Under the pieces are notes generated by a model that searched no databases, was not told where the DNA came from, and saw nothing but the letters and a program-made list of their open reading frames with translations. Source: Vitrella brassicaformis CCMP3155 (taxonomy: Eukaryota; Protista; Chromerida). From it: a stretch of DNA of 64,000 nucleotides. The position numbers were made by a program, and so were the translations under genes. Shown in pieces: positions 7,492 through 45,966 of the stretch (position 1 is its first letter; every line of letters begins with the position of its first letter). The stretch covers positions 62,001-126,000 of the forward strand of contig CDMY01000303.1 of the NCBI GenBank assembly GCA_001179505.1. Reading direction: 5' to 3'.

Positions 7492-8357
7492 ATGAAGGGA
7501 GTGATGGCCATGCGTGCGCTCCTCATCGCCTTGGCGGCCGTATGTTCCGTAGCTGTGGCCTCGGCCACGTACAGCGACTACTGCGAGGGCGAGGACTGCC
7601 ATACTGGTGGGTGCATCTGACCAGATCTATGGCGTATACATCACTCCTGAGCCACATGTGGCTGTCCTTCCTGTCGCTGTGTGCAGATGCGTCGTTTGTG
7701 GACCGCACTGACGAGATTTCCCGCCTGCAGATCGCCGGCACCCACAGCAACAAAGGTGTGCGCGGCAGCCATGGACGACACACACAGCTGATGCGAGATG
7801 AATGCACTGCGCACGTGGCGGCATGGATGGATGGATGGATCTGTGTTGCCGCATGGTGTGTGCAATGTGTGTGTGCAGGTGTCTCTGGCCATCAGTTCTA
7901 GCTGTCGGTCGTGAAGCAGCAGGTGGCTCACGCCAAGAACACGATGGCTGCGGCGCTTACGATGACACAGACGGCTCAGACGATGGCACACACGGCACTC
8001 AAGACCATCAACAACGCCCAACAACAGCTCCACAGCATCACAGGTACACTACAGACAGATGTGTGTCCGTATGCAATGCATACATACATCTAAGCTTCGG
8101 TTGTATTCCCTCCCTCACTCTCTGTCTGTGCTGTCTGTCTATGTGGGTGAACGGTTCACCTGTCTGTAGGCATGAAGTTCGACTGCTCGTCGCTCAAGAC
8201 TAAGGAGGAGTGCATGCGGGACAAACATGAAAACCCCTGCACCGGTGGTCCCGGGTCTCAGGCTCCCTCAAACTGCGCGTGGGGCCATTACAAGCCCGGT
8301 AGGCGAGGATATTCACGACCAACGTGGAAGGACGAGTGTTACTGCGAGCGCGACTAA
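7492..8357 (+). CDS. Secreted prepro-peptide with Cys-rich C-terminal module, copy 1 (in-frame TAG at 7899-7901)
   Basis: Four exons, all introns phase 1: MKGVMAMRALLIALAAVCSVAVASATYSDYCEGEDCHT / DASFVDRTDEISRLQIAGTHSNK / GVSGHQF*LSVVKQQVAHAKNTMAAALTMTQTAQTMAHTALKTINNAQQQLHSIT / GMKFDCSSLKTKEECMRDKHENPCTGG...CAWG...ECYCERD*. Confidence 0.8.
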
Positions 8358-9023
8358 CACACTTGCTAATCGGCCGCTCTTAGCTCTAGCCGTAGAAGAA
8401 TCAATCAACCCAGGGAGAGAGGGGGGTTACTACAGCTGTCTGTATCCATCTCTCTCTCTGTGCACATAACATACCTACACACCTGCCTGCTGCCTAGACG
8501 GACTGACTGCCTCTGCGTGCGAAGAGGGATAGATGGACGGACTGATGCGTGTGTGGGTGGCGGTGCGAATGATGACTGGCTTCACGGCTGGCTTGATGGC
8601 CTGTCTGTCTGTGTGTCGTGCCTGCCTGCCTGCCTGCCTGTGTGTGGGTCGCTCTTCTCGAACGTACGTACCAATCGAGGGCTCTGCTCAAGGGAGGGAG
8701 GGATGAACTGATGCGTGCGCATGTGTTTGTCGTGCCGGCATGACTGTCTGTCTGGCTGTCTGTCTGTCTGTCTGTCTGTAGATACAGATTTCTCAAATGT
8801 CTATATATCGGCCGACCGGTCTTGTGGACGATGGCCAACTGAATGAACGAAACACACACACATGTACGTCAGTGTGTAGTCACCACAGGGTGAGTGAAGA
8901 TCTCTTCACATTCTCGCCAGTCACTTGCTATAATCCTCAGACTACACGTGTGCAGGAGTGGGTGGCGCACACGCCGACACACGAAGGCGCCTCCAGCCAT
9001 CCATCCATCCAGCCAGCGAGGCA
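7634..9023 (+). repeat. ~1.4 kb inverted segmental duplication, arm A (partner 42219-43595)
   Basis: Direct comparison shows intron 1 tail, exons 2-4 and ~650 bp of 3' flank (e.g. agagaggggggttactacagctgt, gtgtagtcaccacagggtgagtgaagatctcttcacattctcg) matching the reverse complement of 42219-43595, with scattered substitutions and indels. Confidence 0.9.
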
Positions 9024-9434
9024 ACGACTGATTGAGCCAGACAAAACACAACAGCCAGCCGTCGTCTGGCCAGTCGCTCGCTCGCTCGCCACACAAGGAT
9101 ATATACCGGCCAGTACCCTCCCTGTTGGAGTCAGTCAGTCAGTATGGCATCCCCCCGCCCCTCACCTCGACTGACTCACCGACCATACATCGAATTGCAC
9201 TGCACGAGACAGACACATCCAACTACACCAACTGGTTCAGCCGGAGAGAGAGACGTGACCTGCCAATCCCGTCACGTTACCTCGCCTCACATCGCCTCAC
9301 ACAACGTCATGACGTGACATCAGGCCTTGTTTGTTCCTCCGCTTCCGTGGCGTGGCTGATGTTCTGGTTGTTGTCTGGTCTGGTCTGGTCTGGCTGATAC
9401 CCTCCGGCAGCCCACCGATGATGAATGAATGACA

Positions 9435-11391
9435 TCACAGGCCGTCGTCCATCCTGCCGCCCACATCGCCCGGCAGGCCGTTCATCATGACCACCCCGCC
9501 GCCTTTCTTGCCGTACACCGAGGGAGGCGGCATGACCGACAGACGGACAGCCGGGCCGGGCTCGGTCTTCCGCCGGGTGTGCTTGTAGTCGTGGAAGCGC
9601 ACCACGCTGTATGTCAGCAGCAGCACTATCGACAACCCTATAAACACATACAACCACACATACAATACAGAAGCAGCAATGTGACGGCGACCTTACCGAT
9701 GCCCGCGAAGGCGCGCACAGTTATGCGCTCACCCAGAAACACCTGACCACACCACAGACGAATGAGAGGAATGGAATGGACCCACACACAGGCAATAAAT
9801 ATCGGAGTGCATCAGCACATCAAGGTGTCGTGTCTGTGAGACAAGACATACCTACCACTGATATCAGGATGGTTGCCATCTCCTTGCCCACACCAGCCAC
9901 CGTCATCGACAGGGAGCTCGTCAGACCTGCATAGACAGACAGACAGACAGACACATTCACAGACCCATCAGTGCATTCAATGGACGGATGGATGGATGGA
10001 TAAATGGGTCTCGGCTTGGCTGCCTACCTACGAGTCTGAATTCGGAGAGATGGACGGCGAAGGCCACCAACACAGAGAGGGCCACCAAGAAGAGGGCGGA
10101 CATCAGCTTTGGCACATCAGGCAGCGCCAAGTCAGCCTCTGCACACCAGACAGGACAGGCACGCAGGCCCGCATCCATCACCACAACCGCTCTGTGCTCT
10201 GTGTCTGTGTGTCCCTCCCTCCCTCCCTCTGTTTGTGTGTCTGTGTCTGTGTGTGCTTACGAACCAACAAGTCGTTGTACGTCGATGGCTACGGCTGCCG
10301 GTGCGAGGCAGAAGGTGGCTGCCGGTTGTGTGAGGATGAGGAGCTGCAGGGGCTGCAGGTGGCGCGTCTGCAGCATGTGGTGGATGATGACCCACCGGAT
10401 GGCCGACGCCACCACCGCCCCCAGCAGAAACACGACTCCCAGACTGTTGTGCACCTCCATGTCACGCACTGTCAGCGATATCGCCCCCATTATCAGACCA
10501 ACCAACAACAATGTCAGGCAACGGAACACCTCCAAACCTGCATGCAGCCACACACACACACACACACAAACGTATGCGCGCCGCATCAGTCATCCATGTG
10601 TATTTTTTTGTGCGTGTGGTTTGCCGACCGAATGCAAGGCCTAGGAGGTACGTCACAACCACAATGCTGCTCTTAATGACCTGCAAACACACACACACAC
10701 ACACACACACAGCAACACCTGCGGTCTGCCCATTTGCTTGCCTGGCCGCCTCACCGTCATGACGGACACCGAGACCATGCTGTACGACTCATTGCTCAGC
10801 GATATGTCGGCCGCAGTGCACAGAGCAACTGCAAGCGACACACACGGGCAGACAGGCACACAGGCACACACAGACAGACAGCAGATGAGTGTGAGTGAAC
10901 GATGTGCAGCTTCAATCCAGCCGCAGGCCGCCCGCCAGCGGTGCTCACTCACTTGGCACAATGAATCTGAGGTACATCGTGCCAGAGATGGCGGGAAAGT
11001 CCGGGAACCAGGAAAGGAAGGCAAAACTCTGCCAAGACAGACGCCACCAGTGAGTGACATTGCATTGCATTGCATTGCAGGCCCCTCCCTCATCCATCGG
11101 TTGACAACGCGCTGTGTTCATCACGTTAGTTACCGATCTGAGGAGCAGGCTCATGAAGCCAAAGTGGATGAACGTCACCAGAATGGGATACTGGAAGCCA
11201 AGAGTGTCCTGTGCGTTGGACCACACACAACACACATCTGCTGACTCAGGTAGATGCCTTCTGACAAGTGAGTGGAGTGTGTGCCGTACCAAAATGTACT
11301 TCATCAGAAAGGTGAGCGACAGCGAGGCGGCGTACCACGAAAGCACCGCACATGCCACTGCACAGATCTGCCCGGCCACCGACTCACCCAT
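9435..11391 (-). CDS. Nucleotide-sugar / triose-phosphate transporter family protein (SLC35C2-like)
   Basis: Exons: MGESVAGQICAVACAVLSWYAASLSLTFLMKYIL, GFQYPILVTFIHFGFMSLLLR, ADISLSNESYSMVSVSVMT, VIKSSIVVVTYLLGLAFG, GVVFLLGAVVASAIRWVIIHHMLQ, VALSVLVAFAVHLSEFRLV. The W..S.SLT..K, F.YP...T..HF, DI.LSN.S and SEF.LV motifs are typical of the TPT/SLC35C family. Confidence 0.85.
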
Positions 11392-11607
11392 CAGGACACC
11401 CGCCGCTGCCACATATCGATCTCAGCGCAGAAGGCAGCAAGATCTGCCAGGGGCTCACAGACAGCACAACGTCCGGTCCTTTTCCTCTTCCTCGCCCTTG
11501 CGAGGCGAGCTCGTAACTCAGAAGAGAGAAAAAGGGCAGCAGAGTTCCGTTTAGGCAGCTCCCAGCCACCCGCTCAAGTCGTTTCCTTGGCTTGAAGTCC
11601 CGAAACG

Positions 11608-13970
11608 ATGTCTGGGTCTTCAGCCCACCCCGAGTCGTCTGATGTGCCCTCTACTCAGAGGTCTGCCATCCTGGATCTGCCGGTGGATGAGAAGGGCTTT
11701 GTGTCCGAGGCCGACCGCGACGCGCAGTTCCGGCGGCTGCGGATGAAGCTGGAGAACCGGGGCTGCTTTGACTGCAACGCCCGCAACCCCACCTGGATGA
11801 GCCTCACCTATGGCGTCTACCTGTGCCTCACCTGCAGCGGAAACCACAGGAGAATGGGCGTGCACGTGTCATTCGTCAGGTACTGTACAAGGACACACAG
11901 ACAGACAGACGGGGCAGACAGACAGACCTGAGAGAGAGAGAGAGAGAGAGAGGCGAGACGGCGGGGGGTATGTGGCTGCAGGTCTTGTGAGCTGGACAAA
12001 TTCACGAGGGAGCAGCTGACCCGGATGGAGCTCGGTGAGCGCACCCACACAAGCAACACACAAGCCGAGAGGCCCGACACACTGTCATGTGTTTGTTTGT
12101 CAAGGCGGCAACGGCAAGGCCCGAAGCTACTTCAAACAGCACGGGTGAGCAGACAGCGACGGACGGGACGAGAAAAGCCGTCCTCTCTCCTCTCGCTTCC
12201 ATCTCTCTCTCATCCATCTCTGCCTGCCGCTGGAGAGAGATGCTCAGGTTGTTGGACGGGAAGCATGTCGACTACCACAGCAAAATGGCCCACAAGTACA
12301 AGCACCACCTCGACGTACGTACAATGGAAACAAACACGCCAGCCAGCCAGCCAGAGAAGAGAGAGAGAGATGATGAGATGGTGTGCATCGCATCGTTTGC
12401 TGCGATGCTGTGCCTGGCTGTCTTGCCTTTTCAGAAATTGGTAGCCGGTGCGTTGGGTCGCGACTTCAAGAGAGGCGACACGGGACTTAGTGAAGGTAGG
12501 TCCACATAACGAATCGATGGATGGATGGATGGATGCGTGTATTGGTTGATCCCCCAGAGAGTCCCATTGCGTCAGCGGGCAGCCCCGGTGGCCCGTCAGC
12601 CGCCGGTGGCGCCAAGCCGTCCCTCCCCCCGCCAGTCTCCCCTTTCGGCTCCACCACCACACCAGCCCCATCCCTCGCACCCGCACCAGCATCACCACAG
12701 CAGCAGCAGCAGCAGCCGAAGGAGCCACACCACCCCCCCATCCACCGGCCGGCCCAGCCGATCGCCATCAAGCCCGCGAGCGCCCCGTCGGGTCGCGGCC
12801 CTGTGCATGTCCACGGGCAGCACCATGGAGTGCACGTCGGGGGTCAGCTCAAGGCCCAGCGGCTGGATGTGGGCTTTGATTTCGACTCGCTGGAGAAGGA
12901 GCTGCAGCAAAACGAGGCGCAGGCCACCAAGGCCGGCGACAAGGCCGGCGGGCAGTCGCTCTCCGCTGCTGTCGGTGAGTGAGTTAGGGGGAGGGGGCAG
13001 TGATTCAGGAGGCTCTTCGTCTTGTGGGGTGACCTGCGGTGGTCCGTATGTGTCTGTGTGAATGTCAGCTGAGGCGTTAAAGGCCGACGGGACGTCCCCT
13101 GTATCCATCAAAGGCGCAGAGTCGCCCGCCAAACCTGACGCCACCAAGGCCTCAATCAGCAGCACGTACGGACGTCACCCAGACAGACGGACAAAGGCAA
13201 AGGCAAAGGCATACCCGTGTCGTCGTGTGTCATGAATGTCCCCCGTGCTGCAGGAATCGCCTGTCAGCGGCGACGTCCGCGGGCGGCAATGCGGGTGGTG
13301 GGCGGTGGGAGAAGGCCAAGTCCATTTCTTCGGCGGACTTCTTCGCAGACCCGTAAGTGCACAATACCTACAGCTGTCTCTCTCTCGGCTGAATCAATCT
13401 GACAGCTGGGTGTTGTTGCTGCTGCGGGTCCCCTTCAGATCTCGCCAGAGCGCCGCTGAGCGGATGGACATTCAGAACAGGATAAGTGCAATGTCGTCGC
13501 ATCAGGCCATCTCGTCAAATGCCTTCTTTGGAAATCCCTCAGCTGACCCCTCGGTGCGCCCGACCACACGTGCACATATTCCAGACAATGGATTGCGGAT
13601 GGACGTTCTGTGTGTCTGTATATATCTCTGTCTGTCTCTGTCTGTGCTGCAGGGCGTTGCCGGCGACGGACGGGCATCGTGTAAATGCACATGGCCCTTG
13701 TGGCAATGAATGGGTGCAGTACGGCGTTTCCTGATTGATGTGTGTGCGCTTCAGTTGACGACCTGACGGAGCAGGCGCGTCAGGGTATCTCCAATATGGC
13801 AACCAACGCCAAACAGGTGCGTCTGTGCGTTTGTGTGGGTGGGGTGATCCAGGCCCTGGACGAACCCGTCGAGTGAGTCGATGGCTGGTGTCCCTGTGTG
13901 TGGTGTGGTGTGGTGTGTGCAGGGTGTGAGGGCAGCCAAGGACTGGCTGCAGCTGCAACTCAACCGCTGA
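11608..13970 (+). CDS. ARFGAP2: ADP-ribosylation factor GTPase-activating protein, ArfGAP2/3 (Glo3) type
   Basis: Zinc finger [43 protein letters not shown], then [30 protein letters not shown]-terminal Glo3-like motif AISSNAFFG. Stop after DWLQLQLNR. Confidence 0.93.
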
Positions 13971-14577
13971 TCTGATCTGACCTGATCTGGGATGTAGGGA
14001 TGGATGGATGGATAATTGAGGGGATAATTGAAGGGATAATTGCGTGGTCGTGTGCCGCTTAATGACATGGGACTCATTATCTGTCAATGAGAGACAGGAG
14101 AGGGAAAGACAAATGAATAAATAAAGGGCCGAGGCATTGCAATGCATTCCATGGCATGTGTGTGTGCGGCGTACTGTAGACACACGTGTGTGATGCATGT
14201 TGTGTTGTGTGTGGGTCTGGTCTTCTTCATCGTTTTCAATCATCAATCAATGCGTGTGTCGTGTGTGTGTCCGTGCCGTGCCATTCGTGTGATGGGACGA
14301 CTGATCGACTGATACACATACATTACATGCACAGCGGCTAAGAGAGGTGCATCGCTGTCTGCGTGCTGGACAGAAAAGACAAAACACTGGCCGTGACGAC
14401 GGCTACGTGTGGAAAAACCTGTCTATCAGTCAGTGAACGGACGCGTACCCCCACACCCAATCGCATGCCTTGACCGCTCTCACGAAAATCCCCCTCGCGC
14501 CTGCGCGTACTGAACGGCGCACCACTAACGCATCCACGCTTCCATCTAAGCATCTCTGTGTCTGTCCGATCAGTCAA

Positions 14578-17311
14578 TCAGTAGATATACTGCGGCACAT
14601 TGAAGTGGACCAGCCCCAGGGCGACCGTGACCCGCTCTCCGGCACTCTCCTCATTGTTCTCATCCTGGTCGTCGTCATCGGTCATCTGGGGCTCCATCTC
14701 GTGGTCACTCAACCGCCGCTTGACGAACAGCAGATCGCCAGTGAAGGTGCCGTGACCCCCGGCCATGAACCCGGAACAACTCTGAGCAGCAACAGCAGAG
14801 GGAGAGGGCAAGGGTGTGGTGCAGGTTGAATGAACCACTGGGATGGGTGGGTGGCGTGTGTACTTTTTTACCTGGTAGACGAAGTACCCCGACTGGAGCG
14901 GGGGGTCGCCGCCCTCGACGGAGAGGGGCAGGTCGATGAAGCCCTCGTCACACAACACCTGCAGGCACATACCCATCCATCCATCCATCCATGGGTCTTT
15001 GCATCCCTCCCGCTGGCCCTGGCAGCTCACTCACTCACTCACTGACCGGGTGCTTGCCGATGACGCCCCTTCCCCTGCACACATTCGTCCACGCATCGCA
15101 TTGCGTGGTGGACGAGACGACCCCAGTCAGTCAGGCGTGCGTAAGTGCGTCAGAGTGTGGGTGTAGCGGCGTGCGTACCTGACTTCTCGGACCTGCCCGT
15201 TGCCGTCGGTGAGCACCCAGTGGCGACTGAGTGACAGACCACCGACAGCCCAGCCCCTCATGCATGACTTCATTCATCCACAGATTGATTGCGACATGCC
15301 ATGCCACCATCCATACCTCTGGAGCTGCACCTCCGTGAAGCCTCTCTGCTGTGCAGGGACGTGCTGTGGGTGTCCGGGAGGCAGCACCCGCAGCCGGATG
15401 GAGTACGCCCAGTACTGCACGTGCTCGGCCATGTACACCGCACTCGCCAACGCCTCTATGCCGCTGCAGCCATCGATAGATCCATTGCAGTCAGCGCACA
15501 CATCCCATCCACACGTCCAGCCATCCCATCCTGCCATCTCTCTTACTTGGTGACGGCCACGGCGAGGTCTGGCCCCTGTTGTGGGAAGATGTTGATCCCG
15601 CGGGAAGTCTCCTCGCCCGGCACTAACTGGCCGGCACTGGTTGACAGATTCAAACACACACAACAACACACAAAACACACCACACCACAACACCGTTGCA
15701 GCGACAGAGAGTACAACCTATCCATTGATGTATCGCTGAGGCCTCCGTACACGTATGTGCCGTCCCGCAGGCGGTTGACGAACTCCTCCAGCCTGTTCGA
15801 CCCACGAGACGAGACATACATAGTGTCATGCATGAGGCGTGTGTGGTCGACACGTGTGTGTGTGGATACATACCATCTGATGAACCCATGGGGTCCTGGC
15901 GGCACTGCGGGGGTCAGCCGGGTCGCCATGCCGGGCTTCCGATCCATCACGTACACCTGGACACGAACGGGATCCATGTGCTCGTGTGTGCAGGGGGCGT
16001 CGTGTAATATAAGTGTGCACCAGTCCGTTGACGGTGTTGAGCACGAACGCCTTGGGAAAGTGACCAAAGGGACACTGGGCAATAAACAAACTCTGCCAGC
16101 ACCACACACACACAGAGAGAGAGAGACGGGATGCTTGACGGGAGAGTCTTGCCCTCTGTGTGTTGTGTACATTTGCGAATATGGTTTGGTGCCTCTCCCG
16201 GAGGCCGGCCGTGAGGGTGAGGGCATCGTCCAGCGACATCAGCTTGACGCACGCCAGGTGGTTGTACGCCGAGTAGCCGCCAAACAGACCCACGAAGGGC
16301 CACGCCGACTGAGCAATCTCCTCCGGCTTCGTGCGGGGCTGGCCATCGTGAAATGACAACGCCTGACGCCACACCACACCCATGGACAAACAGGCGCACA
16401 GGCAGACATAGAAACATACAGCGGTTGGCCACACTCCCCTCCCTCCTGAGTGAGTGGCCCACCATCTTGTAGTCGGTTGGCAGGTCACCGTTGGCCGCCG
16501 GCGCCTGTCCGGGAGCCACGGGCATCCCACGATAGCGATCAACTCCTGCACTCATATCCACCTTCACACCATACATCGCATACCATAGCATAAAACGCGG
16601 ACACGATAGATATCGAAATGGGCCTGTTGTGTGTACTGTACTCGTGCGGTGCGCCTGTCCTTACCGAGCTGATGGGTCCGTTGAGTGAGTTGCGGATGTG
16701 GTGCAGCTCGTGTTGCTGTAGCCATGCCTTGAGTGACCGCCATGCGCGGCTCACTCTGTTGTAGAGGGCGGCATCCACCGCATAGCCCAGCCGCGACGCC
16801 ACCAGCTGCCACAGGACGAAGGCGATCAGCCAGGAACGGCACGCACCGTTGTTGGAACCAGGGGCCTGCCGTGCAGGTGCAGAAAGAATAACCAACCACC
16901 ATGCAGGGAGAGGGAGAGAGGGAGGCGTGTGAGTGGGAGTGGGAGTGTGTGCGTGTGCGTGGTGCGTACCTGTTGACCGTCTTGTCTGCATGGCGGTGTG
17001 CACTGCTGCAGTCCGAACAGCTGGCCGCACTGCAGCCTGAAGAAACCCTCACCGTGCCTGAACGACGAGAGAGGTGAGAGACGAACACATAAGGCGTTCT
17101 TGGCGCCCCGTTCTCCTCTCTGTCCGTTTGTTTTACATGAGAGTGCTCCATTCCTTTGCGGCTGCCGAGAAGGCCAATAGATCTGCCGGTGCGAGCAGCC
17201 TGCAGACACACAGCCAAGTGGATGACATTGACTTCAGCATCCACTCACTCACCGCAGCAGATGTGTCCAGGCAGGGCCACACGCAGGCAGATCTGACAAA
17301 CGACGAGGCAT
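14578..17311 (-). CDS. F-box protein with an uncharacterised C-terminal region (multi-exon)
   Basis: Manual splicing of the first exons gives MPRRLSDLPACGPAWTHLLR|LLAPADLLAFSAAAKEWSTLM|HGEGFFRLQ..., which matches the F-box pattern LsdLP....IL..L.p.DLl..s...K.W..l. Later in-phase exons include LNGPISS|VDMSAGVDRYRG, EALASAVYMAEHVQYWAYSIRLR and VLCDEGFIDLPLSVEGG. Ends HFNVPQYIY*. Confidence 0.7.
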
Positions 17312-20836: not shown

Positions 20837-21136
20837 NNNNNNNNNNNNNNNNNNNNNNNNNNNNNNNNNNNNNNNNNNNNNNNNNNNNNNNNNNNNNNNN
20901 NNNNNNNNNNNNNNNNNNNNNNNNNNNNNNNNNNNNNNNNNNNNNNNNNNNNNNNNNNNNNNNNNNNNNNNNNNNNNNNNNNNNNNNNNNNNNNNNNNNN
21001 NNNNNNNNNNNNNNNNNNNNNNNNNNNNNNNNNNNNNNNNNNNNNNNNNNNNNNNNNNNNNNNNNNNNNNNNNNNNNNNNNNNNNNNNNNNNNNNNNNNN
21101 NNNNNNNNNNNNNNNNNNNNNNNNNNNNNNNNNNNN
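20837..21136. other. Assembly gap (300 N) flanked by poly-C on both sides
   Basis: Run of N; C homopolymers abut both ends. Confidence 0.99.
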
Positions 21137-21262
21137 CCCCCCCCCCCCCCCCCCTCTGCCCCCATCTCTCTTTGCATGTCAGCCGAGCCAATCAGCGATC
21201 GAGCCCAAAAACGGGCCCACCCGCAGACAGACAGACCATCCTCCCCTTCCTTTCTGTTTGCA

Positions 21263-25030: not shown

Positions 25031-25065
<35 letters not shown>

Positions 25066-37282: not shown

Positions 37283-38230
37283 TCAGAACACGCCCTGTGT
37301 GTCATCCATCCCATGCATCCACACACACAACCACACACAGTTCATTCAGCCGTATCGGTGGTCCGAGAGTCAGCATATATATGGCTGTGTGTTGTGTGGG
37401 GCTGGCTCACCTGTCCGTCCCCAAATGGCGAGATGTGGCCAGAGAGGAGCTGCTCGAGGGTGGCCTGGCCTGTCAGGAACTGCTGGATCAACATGCCGGC
37501 CGTCGCAACCATCGCCAGACGACCGTTCTTCAACTCGCGAAGCTGCATCTGATGGATGGACCAAACGACGAAGAACCACCCACCGACACAGACCAGACAG
37601 ACACACAGAGGGGAGAGCGTGTGACGAGAACAGTCCTCTGCCGCCTTGGTGTGGCTGCCAGGTGAGTGAGTAGTGAGTCCCCTGACCTACCTTTTCGAAG
37701 GCCTCCGGGTTGCTGGCCAGTCCCAGCTTCTGCTGCAGGTTCAGCGGGTCAAACCCCAGATCCCCCGGGGCGGCCGAGTCGGCCCTGTTGAGCGCCGCCA
37801 CCTCGATGGCGCCGATCGCCAGAAGCAGCTGAATGATAGCCCCCGGCCGCTCGTTGGCCACCTTGACGAGCGCTGGGATGCCCTTGGTCTCGGAGAAGAC
37901 GCCACTGGGGTCAGGCAGCTGCACCACCTCCTGAGTGGTGAGGCCCAGGGCGGCGAGCATGCAGATGCGGCCGTGCTTGAGCTCCGCAGCACGGTACCAT
38001 GACAGGGTCTCTGGTTCGAGGTCGCCCGCTGCCAGCTTCCAAGGGTCAAAGTTGGGAGCTTCAATGTCGGATCCCACCAAGCCGCCCGGTGGACCCTCGG
38101 CCTGTAGGCGAGAGGGGGACAGGGATTGCCGGAGGGATCCCCTGACGCTGCTGCCGCTGGCTGGTGGGGATGGAACGAAGGCGTGAGCCACGACCGCAAG
38201 AAGAGCCAAGATGACCGCTACTGCCTTCAT
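37283..38230 (-). CDS. LHC: Light-harvesting chlorophyll/carotenoid-binding protein (red-lineage LHC/FCP type) with a bipartite plastid presequence
   Basis: MKAVAVILALLAVVAHAFVP (signal + AF), FDPWKL, WYRAAELKHGRICMLA, PGDLGFDPL, MQLRELKNGRLAMVA. Three exons, ending HISPFGDGQ|GVF*. Confidence 0.95.
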
Positions 38231-38538
38231 CTTCCAGACCGGGGGGCTGGCTATAGATAGGTGCTAGGTGACAAGTGCTTCCCTGCTGCTGCTTCTGTGA
38301 CCTCGCCAACAGATCTGCCACAGTTTTCCGAGGCCGTAAATGGAAGCAAACCCTGCGCCCTAAACCCTGACGACCATTCCTTCTTTAACGCAGCAAGTGC
38401 CGCCTTGCAGCAGACGTCGGATCCGTATGTCGATGCCAAGGGAGGAACGGCGTCTATGCTAGAGAGTGTGCTCGGACGGAGGAGATAGATCGTGTGGCTG
38501 CTGCCACGTGGCGTCAAGTGCGGTCAAGTGGGCGGGTG

Positions 38539-39230
38539 CGGCGCGGCCTCCCAGCAGGTCTACAAGGTCCCCACTCACCAGTGGCGCGCCACACCCTTCT
38601 GGCCCCCAACCGCACTCATCGCCAAGCACGGCCACCCACACCACGGCCAACCGTCGTCCCGCCTCCACTTCAGCTGGAACGGCGCCACCACCGTGAGGTT
38701 CTGGCGCGTCATGGTGGCCAAGAAACGGGCCCAGAGTGCGTGGCGCAAGTTCTGGGAGGGCCCGAAACACCAGTTTGAGCAGTGGGTGGATGTGCCGGAG
38801 ACAAGCGGGGCGTGCGCGTTTTACCGGGTGGAAGCGCTTGACGGCAAGAGGCGGGTGCTGGGGGTGTCGAAGCAAGTGGCCACGGAGGGGTGCCGGAAGT
38901 GAATGGACGGACAACTAACTGTGGGTAGGTGGGTCGGTGGAGTGGGGGTTGGTGTGATGTGAGCGTCGCCACTCAGTCACGAAGTCGGGGTGTCGATAGA
39001 TAGATGTGATGATAGTGGTGCCTGCCTGCCTGCCTGCCTGAATACGTGTGTGTGCGCTGATGCGTGTGGATGGACGGACGGTAGATCAGATAGAGTGGCT
39101 GTTGAACGAACTGTCTTTCTCTTTATGGGTGGATGATGCCTGGGTGGCTGGGCTGCCCAGCCAGCCATTTCGATCCTCATTGGCCTACGGGGCACTCACT
39201 CATACCATTTGTAAGTGTGCATCTGTCTGT
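38539..39230 (+). repeat. 692 bp near-identical direct duplicate of 41227-41918 (last ASST exon plus 3' flank), ending at a gap
   Basis: Offset 2688 bp. One visible mismatch near the start (gtctacaag vs gtgtacaag). Confidence 0.92.
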
Positions 39231-39530
39231 NNNNNNNNNNNNNNNNNNNNNNNNNNNNNNNNNNNNNNNNNNNNNNNNNNNNNNNNNNNNNNNNNNNNNN
39301 NNNNNNNNNNNNNNNNNNNNNNNNNNNNNNNNNNNNNNNNNNNNNNNNNNNNNNNNNNNNNNNNNNNNNNNNNNNNNNNNNNNNNNNNNNNNNNNNNNNN
39401 NNNNNNNNNNNNNNNNNNNNNNNNNNNNNNNNNNNNNNNNNNNNNNNNNNNNNNNNNNNNNNNNNNNNNNNNNNNNNNNNNNNNNNNNNNNNNNNNNNNN
39501 NNNNNNNNNNNNNNNNNNNNNNNNNNNNNN
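39231..39530. other. Assembly gap (300 N)
   Basis: Run of N; it hides the 5' end of the arylsulfotransferase gene. Confidence 0.99.
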
Positions 39531-41590
39531 CCCTACCTCCTGGTCCTGGACAACCGGGGCGACATGGTCTTCCACCTGCGGCTCAAGGACAACATCTCCA
39601 TGGCGGGGCGGGCCAACTTCGACATCAACGCCAATGGCCACATGGTCTTCGGCCTGTCGGAGGTCGACAAGAGCTACAGATTCGTCCGCAAGAACACCGC
39701 ACCGCACGGATACACAGCCGACTGTGAGTGAGGCCACACCCCACCCCACCCCACCCCACCACACAACGATGAGTGGGTGGGTGGGTGGATGGATGGATCG
39801 ATGGGCTGCTCTTCGTTGTTTCTCTCAGCGCATGACTTCAAAAAGCTTGCTTCAGGTGAGGGCGTGGCGGTTGCTGTCGCGTGTGGTGTGGTGTGGTGTG
39901 GGGAGGTGTGCGAGTGCGATGCGCTCTTCCCATGCATACTTAATCAATCTGTGTGTGCGTCAGGCGGGTCTCTCTTTCTGCACAAGCTTCGCGAGATTGT
40001 CTGGCACAAAGGCCACCAAGTGCCGCTGCAGGTAGCAGCCGTCACCGAAACCGATAGGTCCGTCCGTCCGTCCAAACACACTCCCAGCCCGGCCGGCCCC
40101 ATGAGCACAGACCTGCCTGCTTCTGTCTGTCTGTCTGTCTGTCTGTGTGAGTGCTCTCAGGAAGGGCACTGTGATCTTTGAGTGGCGTGCGTGGGACCAC
40201 TACACCATTGATGAGCTCATGCGGTTCTCCATCGTGCTGCAGTCCGCAGGGCCCAGCCAAAGACGCAAGTCCGACAAGATGCACCCCAACTCGGCCTCAT
40301 TGACCCCCGACGGCCACCACTGCTACTCCTTCAGACAAATGGGTGGGTGGGCGCGTGTGTGGTGTGCCTTTCGCGCGCCATCCGGATGGGCCAAAACTGC
40401 CAGCGCATAGAGACCATCCATCCCATATACCTCTTTGTGTGTAGGAGTGGTCAAGGTGAATCGCAACACGGGCGACGTGATATGGCGGTTCGGCGGCAGC
40501 ACGGCCAACAACCAGTTCCGGTTCGTTAACGACCCGCGGGGCTTCGCGCACCAGCACGACGCCAAACTCACCAAACCCAACACAGTCATCATGTTCGACA
40601 ACCGTAAGCAACAGAGAGAGCACACAGGACCTTAAACCCTCCCCTCCTCCCTCCCCTATGTGTGTGGTCAGATCCCTACGCTTATCCCAAGAGGGGTCCG
40701 TCGTATTCCCGCATGGTCGAGTACACTCTCGACCCGGTCAAGATGACGGCCCGCAAGACGTGGGAGTACGACGCCGGCAAGAACATCTTCTCGCTCGGCA
40801 ACGGCGCCGTCAACGCGCTCCCTAACGGCAACAGGGGAATCGGTACGTACGTGGCTATCCATGTGTGTGTGTGTGTGTGTCTGTGCCCATCGATGGCGAT
40901 CGATGTGTGGATCGGATGGGAGGCTGGGCGGCTCTCTCACTTCACTCGTGTGTCTGTGGGGACATGGCATGTGTGTGTCTCAATCAATCAGCGTGGGGCG
41001 GTCTGGGTTTGAGCCCTCCCATAGCGCAGGGCGCCACCACCCGGTGGAGGCCCCTCGCAGACCCACTCTACACCGAAGTCACGCCATCCGGTATGTATAC
41101 ACACATAAAAGACACACAAACACACAGAGACACAACCACACCAACACGCACCGGTCCATGTCTGTCTGTGTCTGTCTGTCTGTCTGTCTGTTCAGGCGAG
41201 AAGGTGTTGGAGATGTATTTCGAGGACGGCGCGGCCTCCCAGCAGGTGTACAAGGTCCCCACTCACCAGTGGCGCGCCACACCCTTCTGGCCCCCAACCG
41301 CACTCATCGCCAAGCACGGCCACCCACACCACGGCCAACCGTCGTCCCGCCTCCACTTCAGCTGGAACGGCGCCACCACCGTGAGGTTCTGGCGCGTCAT
41401 GGTGGCCAAGAAACGGGCCCAGAGTGCGTGGCGCAAGTTCTGGGAGGGCCCGAAACACCAGTTTGAGCAGTGGGTGGATGTGCCGGAGACAAGCGGGGCG
41501 TGCGCGTTTTACCGGGTGGAAGCGCTTGACGGCAAGAGGCGGGTGCTGGGGGTGTCGAAGCAAGTGGCCACGGAGGGGTGCCGGAAGTGA
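39531..41590 (+). CDS. Arylsulfotransferase (ASST, PAPS-independent beta-propeller family)-like protein, 5' end in gap
   Basis: HDFKKL, VIFEWRAWDHY, KMHPNSASLTPDGH, VVKVNRNTGDVIWRFGG, FAHQHDAKL...IMFDN, YSRMVEYTLD, GAVNALPNGN, YKVPTHQWRATPFWPP, LHFSWNGATTVRFWRV, FYRVEALDGKRRVLGVS. These are typical motifs of the Arylsulfotransferase_2-type family. Confidence 0.85.
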
Positions 41591-42218
41591 ATGGACGGAC
41601 AACTAACTGTGGGTAGGTGGGTCGGTGGAGTGGGGGTTGGTGTGATGTGAGCGTCGCCACTCAGTCACGAAGTCGGGGTGTCGATAGATAGATGTGATGA
41701 TAGTGGTGCCTGCCTGCCTGCCTGCCTGAATACGTGTGTGTGCGCTGATGCGTGTGGATGGACGGACGGTAGATCAGATAGAGTGGCTGTTGAACGAACT
41801 GTCTTTCTCTTTATGGGTGGATGATGCCTGGGTGGCTGGGCTGCCCAGCCAGCCATTTCGATCCTCATTGGCCTACGGGGCACTCACTCATACCATTTGT
41901 AAGTGTGCATCTGTCTGTACTGTGGACGGACGTAGCGCCTGCCTTCCTGGGGGTTTGCGTGTATCTGTCTGTCTGGCGTGCGGGATGCATGTGTGTGTGC
42001 GTGTGCAGAATGCGCCTCCACATACACTACACCACACCACAGCACACTTCAGCGAGATTCGCTGCTGTATTTGTCCATCTCTGACATGCATGTGTGTGTG
42101 TGTGTGTCGGTGTTTTTGAGAGCCAAGTGCGGCGGCGGGTACGGTGCATGGGTTCGCGTGATGGACGGAGACAGGGGGACAAATGGGTGGGTGGTGTGGT
42201 TGATAATGGATGGATCGC

Positions 42219-43595
42219 TGCCTCGCTGGATGGATGGATGGCTGGCTGGCTGGAGGTGCCTTCGTGTGTCGGCGTGTGCGCCACCCACTCCTGCACACGT
42301 GTAGTCTGAGGATTATAACAAGTGACTGACGAGAATGTGAAGAGATCTTCACTCACCCTGTGGTGACTACACACTGACGTACATATGTGTGTGTGTTTCA
42401 TTCATTCAGTTGGCCATCGTCCATCAGACCGGTCGGCCGATATATAGACATTTAAGAATTCTATGTATCGACAGACGCACAGATAGACAGACAGACAGAG
42501 ACAGTCATGCCGGCACGACAAACACATGCGCACGCATCAATCCCTCCCTCCCTTAAGCAGAGCCCTCGCTTGGTACGTACGTGCGGGAAGAGCGACCCAC
42601 ACATACATAGGCAGGCAAGCAGGAACGACACACACAGAAAGGCAGGTTTACACGCAGACGACGCAGCGCCACCCACACACGCATCAGTCCGTCTATCTAT
42701 CCCTCTTCGCACGCAGAGGCAGTGTGTCCGTCTAGACAGCAGGCGTGTAGGTATGTTATGTACACACAGAGAGAGAGATGGATACATACAGCTGTAGTAA
42801 CCCCCCTCTCTCCGTCCCCTCGGTTGGTTGATTCTTCTACGGCTAGCTAAGAGCGGCAGATCAGCAAGTGTGTTAGGTGTAGTCGCAGTAACACTCCCCT
42901 TGGCAGATTGAGGACGTGCAAAACTTGCCCCACATGCACCTTGAGGACAATTCGGGGCCGGTGCAGGGGTTTGGATGTCTGTCCCGCATGCACTCCTCCT
43001 TAGTCTTGAGCGACGAGCAGTCGAAGTCGCCCTTCATGCCTACAGACAGGTGAGCCCACCCACATAGACAGACAGCACAGACAGACAGAGAGTGAGGGAG
43101 GGAATGCAACCGAAGCTTAGATGTATTATCTGCATTGCATGCGGACACACATCTGTCTGTAGTGTAACTGTGATGCTGTGGAGCCGTTGTTGGGCGTTGT
43201 TGATGGTCTTGAGTGCCGTGTGTGCCATCGTCTGAGCCGTCTGTGTCATCGTTAGCGCCGCAGCCATCGTGTTCTTGGCGTGAGCCACCTGCTGCTTCAC
43301 GACCGACAGCTGGAACTGATGGCCAGAGACGCCTGCACACAAACACACATTGCACACACCGTACGGCAACACAGATCCATCCATCCATCCATCCATCCAT
43401 CCATCCATGCCGCCACGTGCGCAGTGCATTCACCTCGCACCAGCTGTGTGTGTCGTGCATGGCTGCCGCGCACACCTTTGCTGTGGGTGCGGGCGGTCTG
43501 CAGGCGGGAAATCTCGTCAGTGCGGTCCACAAACGATGCATCTGCACACAGCGGACGGGAAGGTCAGCCACATATGGCTCAGGAGTGATGTATAC
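42219..43595 (-). repeat. Inverted segmental duplication, arm B (partner 7634-9023)
   Basis: Reverse-complement match to arm A. Homology stops abruptly at 43595, inside intron 1 of the peptide gene. Confidence 0.9.
42873..43541 (-). pseudogene. Secreted Cys-rich peptide family copy 2: lacks exon 1 and has a mutated splice donor
   Basis: Exons 2-4 are present (DASFVDRTDEISRLQTARTHSKG / GVSGHQFQLSVVKQQ... / GMKGDFDCSSLKTKEECMRDRHPNPCTGPELSSRCMWGKFCTSSICQGECYCDYT*). The exon-3 donor reads TT at 43167-43166 where copy 1 has GT (8044-8045). The signal-peptide exon is replaced by unrelated sequence beyond 43595. Confidence 0.8.
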
Positions 43596-45108
43596 TGTGA
43601 GGGTCGGATAAATGGGACGCTGCTTATATGGGAAAATCGTTATATGGGAAAATCCCATTTAACCGTTTACTTTGTGGATGTTGCACATTTACAAGCAGGT
43701 GACATTCATTCATTGTGAGCCGTCGCAATGACCTGCATGATGTCCAGCGTGCCTCACTGATCACTGTGAACCAAATTTCACCGTCGAACACCCACAAACA
43801 GCCGAGATCGGGGCCGCCGAATTGGGGCCAGTGAATCACAAGAGAAGCAGCGATGCGAACAAGCAGCGGAGCACCATGAATGGCTCTCCTCTGAGCACAG
43901 CGTAGCATTTGCAGTGAAACAGCGACACAACAACCATTGTCAGACGCGCAGGAGGCCGCCTGCGGCCCTCCTCACCAGCGGAGTGAGGAGTGCTTCTACG
44001 GAGAGCCTCTCCGCCTCTCTCGACAGCCATAGACGTCACTATCGCATCGTCCGTCCCCCCTCTGCTCAGCGATGAGCTTCTTCGACGGCGTGCGGCGCGA
44101 TGTACGTCTCGCGTACGGGCCTGGCAGTGGGCTGGAGAAGGTCTCCCGCGTGCTGCACCTCAGCACTGACCTCTATTGGCCAGGTGAGAGGACGGGCAGG
44201 GCGGAAACGGGATACACTCTTCAACAGGTTGATGTGTGCAGCTCCAGTCATTCAGCGCCTGATCAGCCATGTCGACACGACGTCGGCAAGCTCAATCAGA
44301 CACATGCGGGAGGATAGGTGTATAGGCTGAAATACTGTGTCGCGGCCATCAGCACGGTGAGAGAAGGAGATGGCGGCAATGCGGCCAAACGAAGCATCAA
44401 CACACCTGCCAGACAGACAGACAGACACAGGAGCACTCAGACGAGTACTGTAGAAGGTGTGAACAGGATAAGCAGGGGGGCGTTCATTCAAGATTTGACC
44501 GCTTGTTCGTTCGCATATGCACATAGCTATCAATCAATATACACAAATAGATAGAGAGATATGTATATATGTACACAGCTAGTCAGTCAGTCAACACGCG
44601 CACGCATCAGGCAGACGGCAGGTACGCAAACGACGCACCGCGACACACGCACGCGACACACTCACGCAGACAGCAAATCGTATATAAGCTCCTCTGGCCT
44701 ATGAACGTGGGAGGGGCAGTGATAGGAATGCAGAGAATGAGATAGGCACGACAGACACACAGGCAGGCAGGCAGGCAGGCAGACAACGCAAACGACGCAC
44801 TACCACACCCATCAGACACACGCACGCAGGCCGACACATACAGACAGGCAAGCACGCACACAGTGCATACGCACACGCCGTTAAAGGCCATCCATCCAGT
44901 GAGTGAGTGCTTAAACAATAGCCAGCCGTGGGTCGGTCGGGTCATTGGTTGGTTCGCTCAGCCCTCTTCCTCTCTCCCTCCCTTGTAGCTACCCCCGGAC
45001 GTGCTTTCTCTCAGCCCTTCCCTTTGCTTTACACATCTGCTTTTACATATCTGTTGCTGTGTGCGTCTGTTCTAGAGAGAAGCGGGATGTGTCGGGCTAA
45101 AAATCTTA

Positions 45109-45302
45109 TCACTCCGCCTCATTCAGTCTCTCCATCTCTCTGCTTCCCTCCTCGTCGTAGAGGTTGCAGATGCACCCTTTGTCTTTTGTCCACTTGCAGG
45201 CTGAGTGTCGTTCTTTGTTTTTCGCACACCCCTCCTCCCAGCCCATCCAGTTGTTGGTCAAGCAGCTACCGTGGTCCGTGTTCACACCGCAAGGGTTCTC
45301 CC

Positions 45303-45337
<35 letters not shown>

Positions 45338-45966
45338 AAAGGAGGTGCTCCATATCTCCTTGCAAACACTTGCGTGGGCCAGATCTCACCTTTGAACTCC
45401 TCCCGGTGCGAGGATCCGCCTCATTTGCCCGTGTCGCCCGCCTCCTTGGAGGCCACGTGTTGCTGCAGCTGCTCGATGGAATTGAGTGCGCTCGTTGCTG
45501 TGGTCTTGGAGACGTTCCTCATATTGGTAAGCCCCCGATCCATCATGTTGGTAAGGTTCTTCACTTTGTTGTGGATGAGCGCCAGCTGCTCCTCGACGGA
45601 CGGATCGCCAGCAGAGAACGCGCCACCGGCAGATGCAGCTGCACACACACACGCGCGCGCACAATGCATCCAAGCCGCACACATCCAAAGACACGTGCAC
45701 ACCTTTGTTGCTGTGGGTGCCTGCGGTCTGCAGGCGGAAGATCTCGTCAGTGCGGTCCACAAACGACGCACCTGCACACAGCGGACAGGAAGGTCAGCCA
45801 ATATGGCTCAGGAGTGATGTATACGCCATAGATCTGATCAGATGCACCCACCAGTATGGCAGTCGTTGCCCTCGCAGTAGTCGCTGTACGTGGCCGAGGC
45901 CACAGCTACGGAACATACGGCCGCCAAGGCGATGAGGAACGCACACATGGTCATCACTCCCTTCAT
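45109..45966 (-). CDS. Secreted Cys-rich peptide family copy 3 (in-frame TGA at 45423-45421)
   Basis: MKGVMTMCAFLIALAAVCSVAVASATYSDYCEGNDCHT / DASFVDRTDEIFRLQTAGTHSNK / AASAGGAFSAGDPSVEEQLALIHNKVKNLTNMM...GDTGK*GGSSHREEFK / GENPCGVNTDHGSCLTNNWMGWEEGCAKNKERHSACKWTKDKGCICNLYDEEG...AE*. The 5' flank aagagcgttttcgatttggttgctgg is shared with copy 1. Confidence 0.8.

What the first reader, a model, noticed from the sequence alone, without database searches (positions are those of the whole stretch)
7492..45966. Three-member family of secreted prepro-peptides: conserved signal/pro exons, hypervariable Cys-rich C-terminal module
Seen: copies at 7492-8357 (+), 42873-43541 (-) and 45109-45966 (-) share a near-identical signal peptide (copies 1 and 3), an acidic YSDYCEG.DCHT segment and exon 2. 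A helical spacer follows, then a terminal module in which the NPC...C.W...C.C frame is kept but the loops differ completely: NPCTGGPGSQAPSNCAWGHYKPGRRGYSRPTWKDECYC vs NPCTGPELSSRCMWGKFCTSSICQGECYC vs NPCGVNTDHGSCLTNNWMGWEEGCAKNKERHSACKWTKDKGCIC. Between copies 1 and 2 the introns and 650 bp of 3' flank are more alike than the Cys loops. Known: conserved signal/pro plus hypervariable disulfide-rich mature region is the layout of conotoxin and defensin precursors. Inference: an undescribed, rapidly diversifying toxin, antimicrobial or recognition peptide family in a chromerid-like alga.
Basis: partly seen in the sequence, partly recalled or inferred. Interest (0 to 1): 0.82.

Follow-up and report, generated by a model that had tools for sequence, protein, structure and literature searches.

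The report
Broken copies of secreted cysteine-knob family
The three genes belong to a family of about 30 loci, found only in the alga Vitrella, that encodes small secreted proteins whose cysteine-rich tips differ far more than the non-coding DNA around them; all three copies here are transcribed, but a stop codon or frameshift separates the secretion signal from the tip.

Summary
The sequence features are real. Three paralogs sit at the stated places in Vitrella brassicaformis CCMP3155, and no assembly gap touches any of them.

Between copies 1 and 2, introns, exons 2-3 and about 640 bp of 3' flank are 91-98% identical. A 90-nt block coding the cysteine loops is only 45% identical (Fisher p = 9e-23).

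- No copy keeps one reading frame from signal peptide to cysteine module. Copy 1 mRNA carries an in-frame TAG. Copy 3 mRNA carries an in-frame TGA. Copy 2 has lost exon 1 to a dispersed repeat, and a donor shifted by 1 nt puts a stop at the start of exon 4.
- The family is not three genes. About 30 loci match, all named database hits are uncharacterised Vitrella proteins, and some paralogs are intact and expressed.
- In the cysteine exon, synonymous and non-synonymous divergence are both near saturation (dN/dS 0.8-1.4), and the modules give conflicting trees. That points to a recombination or gene-conversion mosaic, or to local hypermutation. It is not clean positive selection.

No known domain matches. 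A toxin or antimicrobial role is untested. An overlapping window of this scan flagged copy 1 before (s1-221745).

The parts
7383..7606 (+). Copy 1, 5'UTR plus exon 1. The ATG is at 7492. It encodes the signal peptide and the acidic Y-S-D-Y-C-E-G-E-D-C motif.
   Evidence: Transcript contig L043 matches 7383-7606 exactly and joins it to exon 2.
7687..7755 (+). Copy 1, exon 2 (69 nt, phase 1-1).
   Evidence: Exact match in L043 at the predicted GT-AG borders.
7879..8043 (+). Copy 1, exon 3 (helical Q/A/M-rich segment).
   Evidence: Exact match in L043. AlphaFold2 predicts one long helix.
7899..7901 (+). In-frame TAG in copy 1, where copy 2 and paralog C307 have CAG. It ends the signal-peptide ORF after 68 codons.
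   Evidence: Searches show it in the genome. L043 keeps it, as do the RNA contigs X2 and X8. The deposited model CEM00968.1 starts at an internal Met after it.
8170..8357 (+). Copy 1, exon 4 coding part: six-Cys module, TAA at 8355-8357.
8246..8335 (+). Hypervariable block: the loops between the third Cys and the terminal C-x-C.
   Evidence: 45% identity to copy 2 against 91-98% on both sides. p = 8.6e-23. No second copy of either version exists in the genome.
8358..8997 (+). Conserved 3' flank or 3'UTR shared with copy 2. Parts of it are also found behind other paralogs.
   Evidence: for identity to copy 2. One search finds matches at C307, C276, C866, C416 and C356. L043 shows it is transcribed.
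42873..43039 (-). Copy 2, exon 4: eight-Cys module in its own frame. It is out of frame in the mRNA, whose frame stops at TGA 43036-43034.
   Evidence: The deposited model CEM00980.1 ends ...H-S-I-T-A.
43169..43332 (-). Copy 2, exon 3. The original donor is mutated to TT, and a GT one base upstream (43168-43167) is used instead, giving a -1 nt exon.
   Evidence: One search shows the genomic sequence. The transcript junction ...ATCACA|GCATGAAGG is in L044. Read laying pieces agree.
43476..43541 (-). Copy 2, exon 2 (66 nt, with a 3-nt deletion relative to copy 1).
43596..43731 (-). Dispersed repeat that replaces exon 1 of copy 2 and acts as its first transcribed exon (donor at 43595-43594).
   Evidence: L044:1611-1742 matches more than 20 places in the genome and this spot at 73%. 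The junction is in L044.
45852..46056 (-). Copy 3, 5'UTR plus exon 1 (ATG at 45966).
   Evidence: RNA contig X1 record 4, 1069 nt. Sequence.
45703..45771 (-). Copy 3, exon 2.
   Evidence: The 66+3 unlisted letters of X1 record 4 between exon 1 and exon 3 fit this exon.
45390..45638 (-). Copy 3, exon 3: a divergent helical segment.
   Evidence: Contiguous in RNA contigs of X1, X2 and X8. The single mismatch is explained by the splice junction.
45421..45423 (-). In-frame TGA in copy 3, 11 codons before the end of exon 3. The ORF from the signal peptide ends here, after about 134 codons.
   Evidence: It is retained in the spliced RNA contigs.
45109..45302 (-). Copy 3, exon 4 coding-like part: six-Cys module plus an acidic tail. 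The 3'UTR runs to at least 44792.

Best explanation
The window holds three members of a lineage-specific multigene family of Vitrella brassicaformis.

Architecture of intact members (shown): a cleavable signal peptide with a short acidic di-Cys motif, a small exon 2, one long amphipathic helix of about 45-60 residues with a 3-4 hydrophobic repeat, and a C-terminal module of about 40-60 residues with six Cys (C...C...C...C-x-C...). The loop before the C-x-C varies in length and sequence.

Function (inferred): intact members enter the secretory pathway and display a disulfide-locked variable tip on a helical stalk, as a binding or recognition surface.

Evolution (shown): the family evolves by birth and death plus recombination. 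The leader (5'UTR, exon 1, intron 1, exon 2) and the 3' flank are nearly identical between paralogs. The cores, above all the Cys loops, are old or fast-diverging cassettes.

State of the three window copies (shown): all are transcribed and correctly spliced, yet each has lost the reading frame between signal peptide and Cys module.
- Copy 1 has a TAG early in exon 3.
- Copy 2 has exon 1 replaced by a repeat and a 1-nt donor shift.
- Copy 3 has a TGA late in exon 3.

They are therefore most likely expressed, recently decayed copies, or makers of truncated products, and not working prepro-peptide genes.
For: Organism and family:
- All named hits of a helix-exon profile against 1.84 billion proteins are Vitrella 'uncharacterized' proteins.
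- The genome has 32 matching loci.
- An ENA metagenome contig (L078) has the same exon layout but is only 79-81% identical to any locus in this genome.

Intact, expressed members:
- CEL95555.1 (P0005, and its transcript-derived cluster-mate P0023), CEM02232.1 and CEM23773.1 carry signal, helix and six Cys in one ORF.

Splicing and stops in the window copies:
- L043 equals the copy 1 exons exactly, with the TAG.
- X1 record 4 runs through the copy 3 TGA.
- L044 and CEM00980.1 show the shifted donor of copy 2.

Relaxed constraint:
- Copy 1/2 exons (95.5-97.6% identical) are no better conserved than their introns (94-97%).

Divergence island:
- It recurs in other pairs. For example C284/C688 run at 85-100% over most of exon 1 to exon 3 (dipping to 73% in intron 2), fall to 56-61% in the Cys exon, then return to mostly 80-100%.

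Mosaic history:
- Copies 1 and 3 are 88-100% identical only over about 300 bp of leader and about 50% beyond it.
- In the leader tree copies 1 and 3 have branches of 0.014-0.016. In the exon-3 tree copy 3 has a branch of 0.65-0.75.
- Exon 4 has dS 0.55-0.88 and dN 0.62-0.87. Exon 1 has dS 0.04-0.29 and dN 0.014-0.04.
Against: - All six members of the closest subfamily (copies 1-3, C276a, C276b, C307) look disrupted, yet they keep open Cys-module frames and intact Cys codons. Several breaks fall exactly in the helix-to-Cys linker (copy 2, copy 3, C688, C276b, C307). This is more orderly than random decay and could hide recoding or selection for truncated products.
- Transcripts with premature stops remain readily assembled. 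Depths cannot be compared.
- Secretion, disulfide bonding, oligomerisation and binding are all inferred. The self-association job gave no verdict.
- The structure models are of modest confidence (pLDDT 60-70).
- Alignment of the Cys loops is close to arbitrary, so the dS and dN values there are rough.
Confidence: 0.6

Rival explanations
1. One reading: all three are working prepro-peptide genes. Signal peptide and pro-region are cleaved to release a hypervariable disulfide-rich toxin, antimicrobial or recognition peptide. The stops are bypassed by readthrough or frameshifting, or are errors.
For: - The layout of conserved leader plus hypervariable Cys loops is real.
- The genes are transcribed.
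- The Cys-module frames stay open with Cys codons kept.
- Several family breaks cluster in the linker.
Against: - The stops appear in the genome and in independent RNA assemblies.
- Three different lesions (TAG, TGA, -1 nt splice shift) would need three different bypass mechanisms.
- Copy 2 has no signal peptide at all.
- The copy 1 TAG lies before the helix and not in the linker.
- No conserved dibasic site sits before the Cys domain.
- No known readthrough context is visible by inspection.
Confidence: 0.07
2. The truncated products are the functional ones: a 68-codon ORF from copy 1, and a helix-only secreted protein of about 134 residues from copy 3. Loss of the Cys tip would then be selected, not decay.
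For: - Both mRNAs keep an intact signal peptide and leader.
- The leader is kept about 95% identical between copies 1 and 3 although the rest has diverged.
- Breaks recur at the helix/Cys junction in several paralogs.
Against: - Intron 1 is conserved as strongly as the leader exons. This is what gene conversion gives, and not what selection on the peptide gives.
- Copy 1/2 exons show no excess conservation over introns.
- Copy 2 has neither leader nor tip in frame.
Confidence: 0.1
3. The divergence island arises in place, from diversifying selection and/or a locally raised mutation and indel rate aimed at the Cys loops, as proposed for conopeptides. It is not an old cassette sitting inside flanks homogenised by gene conversion.
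For: - Neither loop version of copies 1 and 2 has a donor elsewhere in the assembly.
- In the copy 1/2 pair the island lies strictly inside the coding sequence, keeps the frame through several indels, and keeps a central S-x-C-x-W-G stretch.
- dN/dS reaches 1.3-1.4 in some pairs.
Against: - dS is raised about ten-fold together with dN.
- In the C284/C688 pair the island spreads into intron 3 and the first part of the 3'UTR.
- Island borders differ between pairs: exon 2/intron 2 for copies 1 and 3, and inside exon 4 for copies 1 and 2. This is what variable conversion tracts give.
- Module trees conflict.
Confidence: 0.23

Closest known systems
Conotoxin (conopeptide) precursor gene superfamilies
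   Same: A conserved signal/leader is joined to a Cys framework whose inter-cysteine loops are hypervariable while the cysteines are kept. PMC3823881 describes this for conotoxins. Both are multigene families with rapid turnover. That synonymous change is also raised in the mature region is my recollection of the conopeptide literature and was not checked here.
   Different: - No sequence similarity; Pfam finds nothing.
- The 'pro' part here is a long amphipathic helix with no conserved dibasic cleavage site.
- The border of the variable block lies inside the last exon.
- The host is a free-living, coral-associated alga without a venom apparatus.
- The three window copies are not intact.
EGF-like domain (six Cys, C-x-C, then G-x-C)
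   Same: Wider family members have C-x(6-8)-C-x(8-14)-C-x(n)-C-x-C-x(3-5)-G-x-C. UniProt labels one member, A0A0G4EV64, 'EGF-like domain-containing protein'.
   Different: - No Pfam EGF model hits any member, even at E<=10.
- A profile of the Cys domain finds no EGF chain in the PDB.
- The window copies end right after the C-x-C and lack the sixth Cys of that pattern; they carry an extra Cys inside the loop.
- The fold could not be tested.
Small secreted cysteine-rich protein families of plants and microbial eukaryotes (defensin-like/NCR peptides, oomycete and fungal SSCPs)
   Same: Lineage-restricted, clustered and dispersed paralogs with a signal peptide, a small disulfide-rich domain and many pseudogenised copies. 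The general properties of these families are from my own knowledge.
   Different: No homology was detected. The long helical segment between signal and Cys domain, and the near-identity of introns and flanks around a divergent core, are not standard features of those families.
Snake-venom PLA2 / three-finger toxin genes (introns more conserved than the exons coding the mature protein)
   Same: Non-coding parts are more alike than the coding core between paralogs.
   Different: In those genes dN exceeds dS. Here both are saturated (dN/dS about 1) and module trees conflict, which points to a recombination mosaic.

Membership tests
Conotoxin-style prepro-peptide precursor | N-terminal cleavable signal peptide | tested here: met
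   Copies 1 and 3 have a K/R n-region, a hydrophobic core (Kyte-Doolittle up to 2.85) and ASA before the predicted cleavage site. Copy 2 lacks it. No SignalP tool was available.
Conotoxin-style prepro-peptide precursor | One open reading frame from signal peptide through pro-region to the Cys-rich mature peptide | tested here: not met
   The mRNAs carry TAG 7899-7901 (copy 1), TGA 45423-45421 (copy 3), and a -1 nt splice shift plus missing exon 1 (copy 2). Paralogs such as CEL95555.1 do meet this feature.
Conotoxin-style prepro-peptide precursor | Conserved proteolytic (dibasic) site in front of the mature peptide | tested here: not met
   Family alignments show a conserved I-T-K-G linker but no conserved dibasic site. 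Only one paralog has K-K-Q-R.
Conotoxin-style prepro-peptide precursor | Conserved leader with hypervariable inter-Cys loops on a kept Cys frame | tested here: met
Conotoxin-style prepro-peptide precursor | Sequence homology to a conotoxin superfamily | tested here: not met
   No Pfam family at E<=10 for the Cys modules.
EGF-like domain | Match to EGF profile models | tested here: not met
   Pfam scans of three window modules and ten family proteins find no EGF model. A PDB profile search finds none.
EGF-like domain | Six Cys with C4-x-C5 followed by G-x-C6 | tested here: inconclusive
   Present in distant paralogs (P0015, P0016, P0006, P0010). Absent in copies 1-3 and C276b, which stop or lose the Cys after the C-x-C.
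EGF-like domain | EGF fold: two small beta-hairpins with 1-3, 2-4 and 5-6 disulfides | not testable with these tools
Fold searches were filled by the helix.
Transcribed pseudogene of a multigene family | Premature stop or frameshift relative to intact paralogs | tested here: met
.
Transcribed pseudogene of a multigene family | Loss of purifying selection (exons no better conserved than introns) | tested here: met
   Copy 1 against copy 2: exons 95.5-97.6%, introns 94-97%. There are few substitutions, so power is low.
Transcribed pseudogene of a multigene family | No protein product containing the downstream module | not testable with these tools
   This needs proteomics or ribosome profiling.

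The most novel reading that the evidence does not exclude
Vitrella runs a conotoxin-like diversity system. A shared leader/helix 'vehicle' is kept uniform by gene conversion, while Cys-loop cassettes are actively diversified by targeted hypermutation or cassette exchange. The recurrent stops and frameshifts at the helix/Cys junction (copy 2, copy 3, C688, C276b, C307) would be a regulated switch, by readthrough or frameshifting, between helix-only and tip-bearing secreted proteins used in interactions within the coral holobiont.
Probability: 0.08. Interest if true: 0.85.

Novelty: new variant of a known kind. Interest (0 to 1): 0.45.

Why it matters
Chromerids are the closest free-living photosynthetic relatives of apicomplexan parasites. 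How secreted and surface protein repertoires diversified in that lineage is an open theme, and PMC4501334 discusses chromerid-specific extracellular proteins.

This is a Vitrella-only family of about 30 loci with a uniform leader and strongly divergent disulfide-locked tips. It gives a concrete, testable example of fast-turnover extracellular proteins in a non-parasitic relative. It is also a clean natural case for studying how gene conversion and divergence islands coexist within 1.4-kb gene units.

For annotation, several deposited Vitrella models of this family are truncated, fused or in the wrong frame. The three window genes should be flagged as disrupted.

Tried and rejected
- Pfam scans of the three Cys modules, the helix, the leader and ten family proteins gave nothing above noise.
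- A profile of the Cys domain against PDB sequences gave one chance hit at E = 1.2.
- ESM Atlas search by features gave no usable hit. By structure it gave only low-TM, unrelated rows built on a poor model.
- AlphaFold2 models had pLDDT 59.5 and 69.9.
- Foldseek against the PDB gave no match. VIA-align wide on both models returned only generic coiled coils aligned to the helix, Z about 6. The fold of the Cys module remains untested.
- The self-association job on the helix of P0023 (two copies) gave no verdict, score 0.06. It is not evidence either way.
- I looked for a gene-conversion donor for the loop blocks of copies 1 and 2. Neither has a second copy in the assembly.
- P0019, which seemed to join the start of copy 2's exon 4 to copy 1's loops, is a chimeric transcript assembly. 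L044 strings together a C848 gene, a dispersed repeat, copy 2 exons 2-3 and copy 1 exon 4. P0006 and P0011 also look chimeric.
- An alternative donor (CAC|GTGGCC) that would skip the copy 3 TGA is rejected. RNA contigs run straight through the TGA to the GTGAGA donor.
- An alternative acceptor created by the copy 1 TAG is rejected. L043 uses the normal acceptor.
- Plastid targeting by a bipartite leader is rejected. The region after the cleavage site is strongly acidic. The expectation that transit peptides are not acidic is from my own knowledge.
Deposited and transcript-derived proteins returned by the tools were used instead.

Full report
**Source and gaps.** The window is G000:C303:62001-126000 of a 72.7-Mb, 1064-scaffold genome. 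Database names identify it as Vitrella brassicaformis CCMP3155. The size and scaffold number match the genome paper (PMC4501334). The window has four N-gaps. The two flagged ones (20837-21136, 39231-39530) lie between copy 1 and copies 2/3, and no copy or homologous flank touches a gap. Each copy is also covered by gap-free transcript contigs. The gaps therefore affect only the claim that the copies are about 34 kb apart on one scaffold.

**Anatomy of copy 1.** It has four exons: 7492-7606 (5'UTR from at least 7383), 7687-7755, 7879-8043 and 8170-8357. The transcript contig L043 (JGI 3300017148) matches these four pieces exactly and in that order.

**Anatomy of copy 3.** Its exons are 45966-45852, 45771-45703, 45638-45390 and 45302-45109, with a 3'UTR running to at least 44792. 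X1 record 4 (1069 nt), together with X2 and X8 contigs, supports this. The single mismatch in the exon-3 piece is the aligner running six bases into the intron, because the start of exon 4 resembles the start of the intron.

**Anatomy of copy 2.** It starts its homology inside intron 1. Transcripts begin in a dispersed repeat (43596-43731) and splice from 43596 to exon 2 at 43541.

**Protein features.** The leader looks like a standard signal peptide with an A-S-A cleavage motif. Exon 3 is predicted as one long helix. Exon 4 holds six Cys in copies 1 and 3 and eight in copy 2.

In the frame fixed by the signal peptide and by conservation across paralogs:
- Copy 1 has TAG at 7899-7901, where copy 2 and C307 have CAG. 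The TAG is in the mRNA. The deposited model CEM00968.1 (95 aa) therefore starts at an internal Met and has no signal peptide.
- Copy 3 has TGA at 45423-45421, inside the contiguous exon-3 RNA piece.
- Copy 2 has lost its GT donor (now TT) and uses a GT one base upstream. The mRNA reads ...ACA|GCA TGA, and the deposited model CEM00980.1 ends ...H-S-I-T-A.

In none of the three mRNAs is the Cys module in frame with a signal peptide.

**Family size and range.**
- DNA and exon-1 searches found paralogs on C276 (two), C307, C284, C688, C535 (two), C147, C231, C356, C677 and C391.
- A profile of 13 helix exons finds 32 matches in the genome at E<=0.01.
- The same profile finds 18 proteins among 1.84 billion representatives. 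Every hit that carries an organism name is a Vitrella 'unnamed/uncharacterized' protein; the rest are unnamed transcript or metagenome entries.
- One ENA metagenome contig (L078) has the same exon 2, helix and Cys-exon layout but is only 79-81% identical to any locus here. A related genome therefore carries the family too.
- Intact one-ORF members exist: CEL95555.1 with its transcript-derived cluster-mate P0023, CEM02232.1, CEM23773.1, and C535a by exon inspection.
- The closest subfamily looks uniformly damaged. C276a and C276b have a TAG in exon 1. C276b and C307 have exon 3 and the Cys frame out of register. Further out, C688 has a TAG in the linker and C284 has no ATG.

**Divergence pattern between copies 1 and 2.** Identity is 94-98% in introns and exons and 91-95% in 640 bp of 3' flank. 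It is 45% (80% ignoring gaps) in 8246-8335 and 77% in the last 22 coding bases. The contrast gives p = 8.6e-23 counting gaps and 1e-4 for substitutions alone. Exons are not better conserved than introns.

**The island recurs, with different borders.**
- C284/C688 and C284/C535a drop from mostly 85-100% (lows of 73% in introns) to 51-61% across the Cys exon, then recover in the 3' flank. For C284/C688 the dip already starts in the linker and intron 3.
- Copies 1 and 3 are 88-100% identical over only the first ~300 bp (5'UTR, exon 1, intron 1, exon 2), and about 50% from intron 2 onward.

**Substitution rates and trees.**
- Nei-Gojobori estimates among four paralogs give the following. Exon 1: dS 0.04-0.29, dN 0.014-0.04. 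Exon 3: dS 0-0.16, dN 0.06-0.16. Cys exon: dS 0.55-0.88, dN 0.62-0.87, dN/dS 0.8-1.4.
- In a leader tree, copies 1 and 3 sit on branches of 0.014-0.016. In the exon-3 tree copy 3 has a branch of 0.65-0.75 and copies 1/2 share a stem of 0.37.
- Neither loop version of copies 1 and 2 occurs elsewhere in the assembly.

**Reading of the pattern.**
- Saturated synonymous change, islands that can include an intron, variable borders and conflicting module trees fit best with gene conversion or recombination. That process would keep leader and flanks uniform around old, divergent cores.
- A local mutational mechanism is not excluded. In the copy 1/2 pair the island is strictly coding, keeps the frame through several indels and keeps the Cys positions. 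This means the loops diverged while the genes were still under selection for an intact module.
- The disrupting mutations are then recent.

**Domain identity.**
- Alignment of the window modules with intact paralogs places five Cys columns as invariant or nearly so: C1, C2, C3 and the C-x-C.
- The variable region is the loop between C3 and the C-x-C.
- Distant members continue with G-x-C, an EGF-like spacing, and UniProt names one of them EGF-like.
- No Pfam EGF model and no PDB sequence matches.
- Structure models were of modest confidence, and fold searches reported only the helix. The fold of the tip is open.

**Function.** Nothing here tests activity. I commit to the following, which is inferred. 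Intact members are secretory-pathway proteins that present a disulfide-locked variable tip on a helical stalk and act by binding something outside the cell. The family turns over quickly. The three window copies are expressed relics or truncated variants. The self-association job gave no verdict.

**Comparison and novelty.** The layout works like conotoxin precursors: conserved leader, conserved Cys, hypervariable loops (PMC3823881). It also resembles small secreted Cys-rich families in general. It is not a member of any known family by sequence. It lacks a conserved processing site, has a long helix in place of a short pro-region, and shows dN/dS near 1 with raised dS. I rate it a new variant of a known kind. 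It has moderate interest for protist genome biology, lowered by the broken state of the copies in this window and the lack of any functional evidence.

**Earlier notes of this scan.** One note flagged the same place (s1-221745). Others flagged further 'prepro-peptide' families in this genome (for example s1-239419). I did not test whether those are the same family.

Exon-wise references and database proteins were used.

Noticed in passing
window 43596-43731 (-); L044:1611-1742: A dispersed repeat of about 130 bp with more than 20 copies across the genome, up to 99% identical (C923, C484, C753, C164, C307 and others). It replaces exon 1 of copy 2 and supplies its first transcribed exon. The element type was not determined.
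   Followed up: partly
window 43965-44180 and 44239-44544 (+): A spliced RNA contig (X1 record 3; GT-AG intron 44181-44238 on the + strand) lies between copies 2 and 3. No long open frame was seen in any frame. It may be a non-coding or UTR transcript.
   Followed up: partly
G000:C688 (L036), G000:C276 (L033, L034), G000:C307 (L035), G000:C284 (L040): Other paralogs carry lesions too. C688 has a TAG at a CAG position in the helix-to-Cys linker. Both C276 copies have a TAG at a GAG position in exon 1. C276b and C307 (at a run of eight C) have the Cys frame out of register with exon 3. C284 has no ATG. Several breaks cluster at the helix/Cys junction.
   Followed up: partly
P0002 (CEL99620.1), P0003 (CEM21116.1), P0001 (CEM01642.1), P0008 (CEL99233.1): Deposited Vitrella gene models of this family are flawed. 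In two, exon 2 is read in the wrong frame ('GRWVVCGPH...' instead of 'GSFVDRTGEIS...'). One is fused to an upstream gene. Two have tails read in a non-Cys frame.
   Followed up: partly
L044 (JGI 3300017297), P0019, P0006, P0011: Public transcriptome assemblies contain chimeras that join different paralogs, or unrelated genes, through shared repeats or identical exon stretches. Proteins called on them (for example P0019) are artefacts.
   Followed up: yes
L078 (ENA ERZ893784, k147_1008993): A metagenome contig carries a family member with the same exon layout and a new six-Cys tip, only 79-81% identical to any locus of this genome. It is presumably from a related Vitrella-like organism.
   Followed up: partly
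window 7820-7840, 43380-43420 (intron 2); 8600-8640, 8745-8790, 42480-42510 (3' flank): (GGAT)n and (CTGT)n/(CCTG)n microsatellites inside the conserved intron and flank account for most length differences between copies 1 and 2. They also break the RNA/DNA contigs and produced the many spurious 'joints' in the read-laying output.
   Followed up: no
window ~8690-8920; G000:C307:24156-24318, C276:9743-9865, C866, C416, C356:213088-213299, C275: A conserved stretch about 350-550 bp downstream of the stop codon of copies 1 and 2 recurs behind other paralogs and at further loci (72-79% identity). It may be a family-linked 3'UTR or regulatory element, or part of the duplication unit.
   Followed up: no
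L043:1724-2806 (-), i.e. downstream of copy 1 in the window: A triose-phosphate-transporter-family (TPT/EamA) gene converges on copy 1. Its transcript overlaps or abuts the copy 1 3'UTR in the assembled contig.
   Followed up: no
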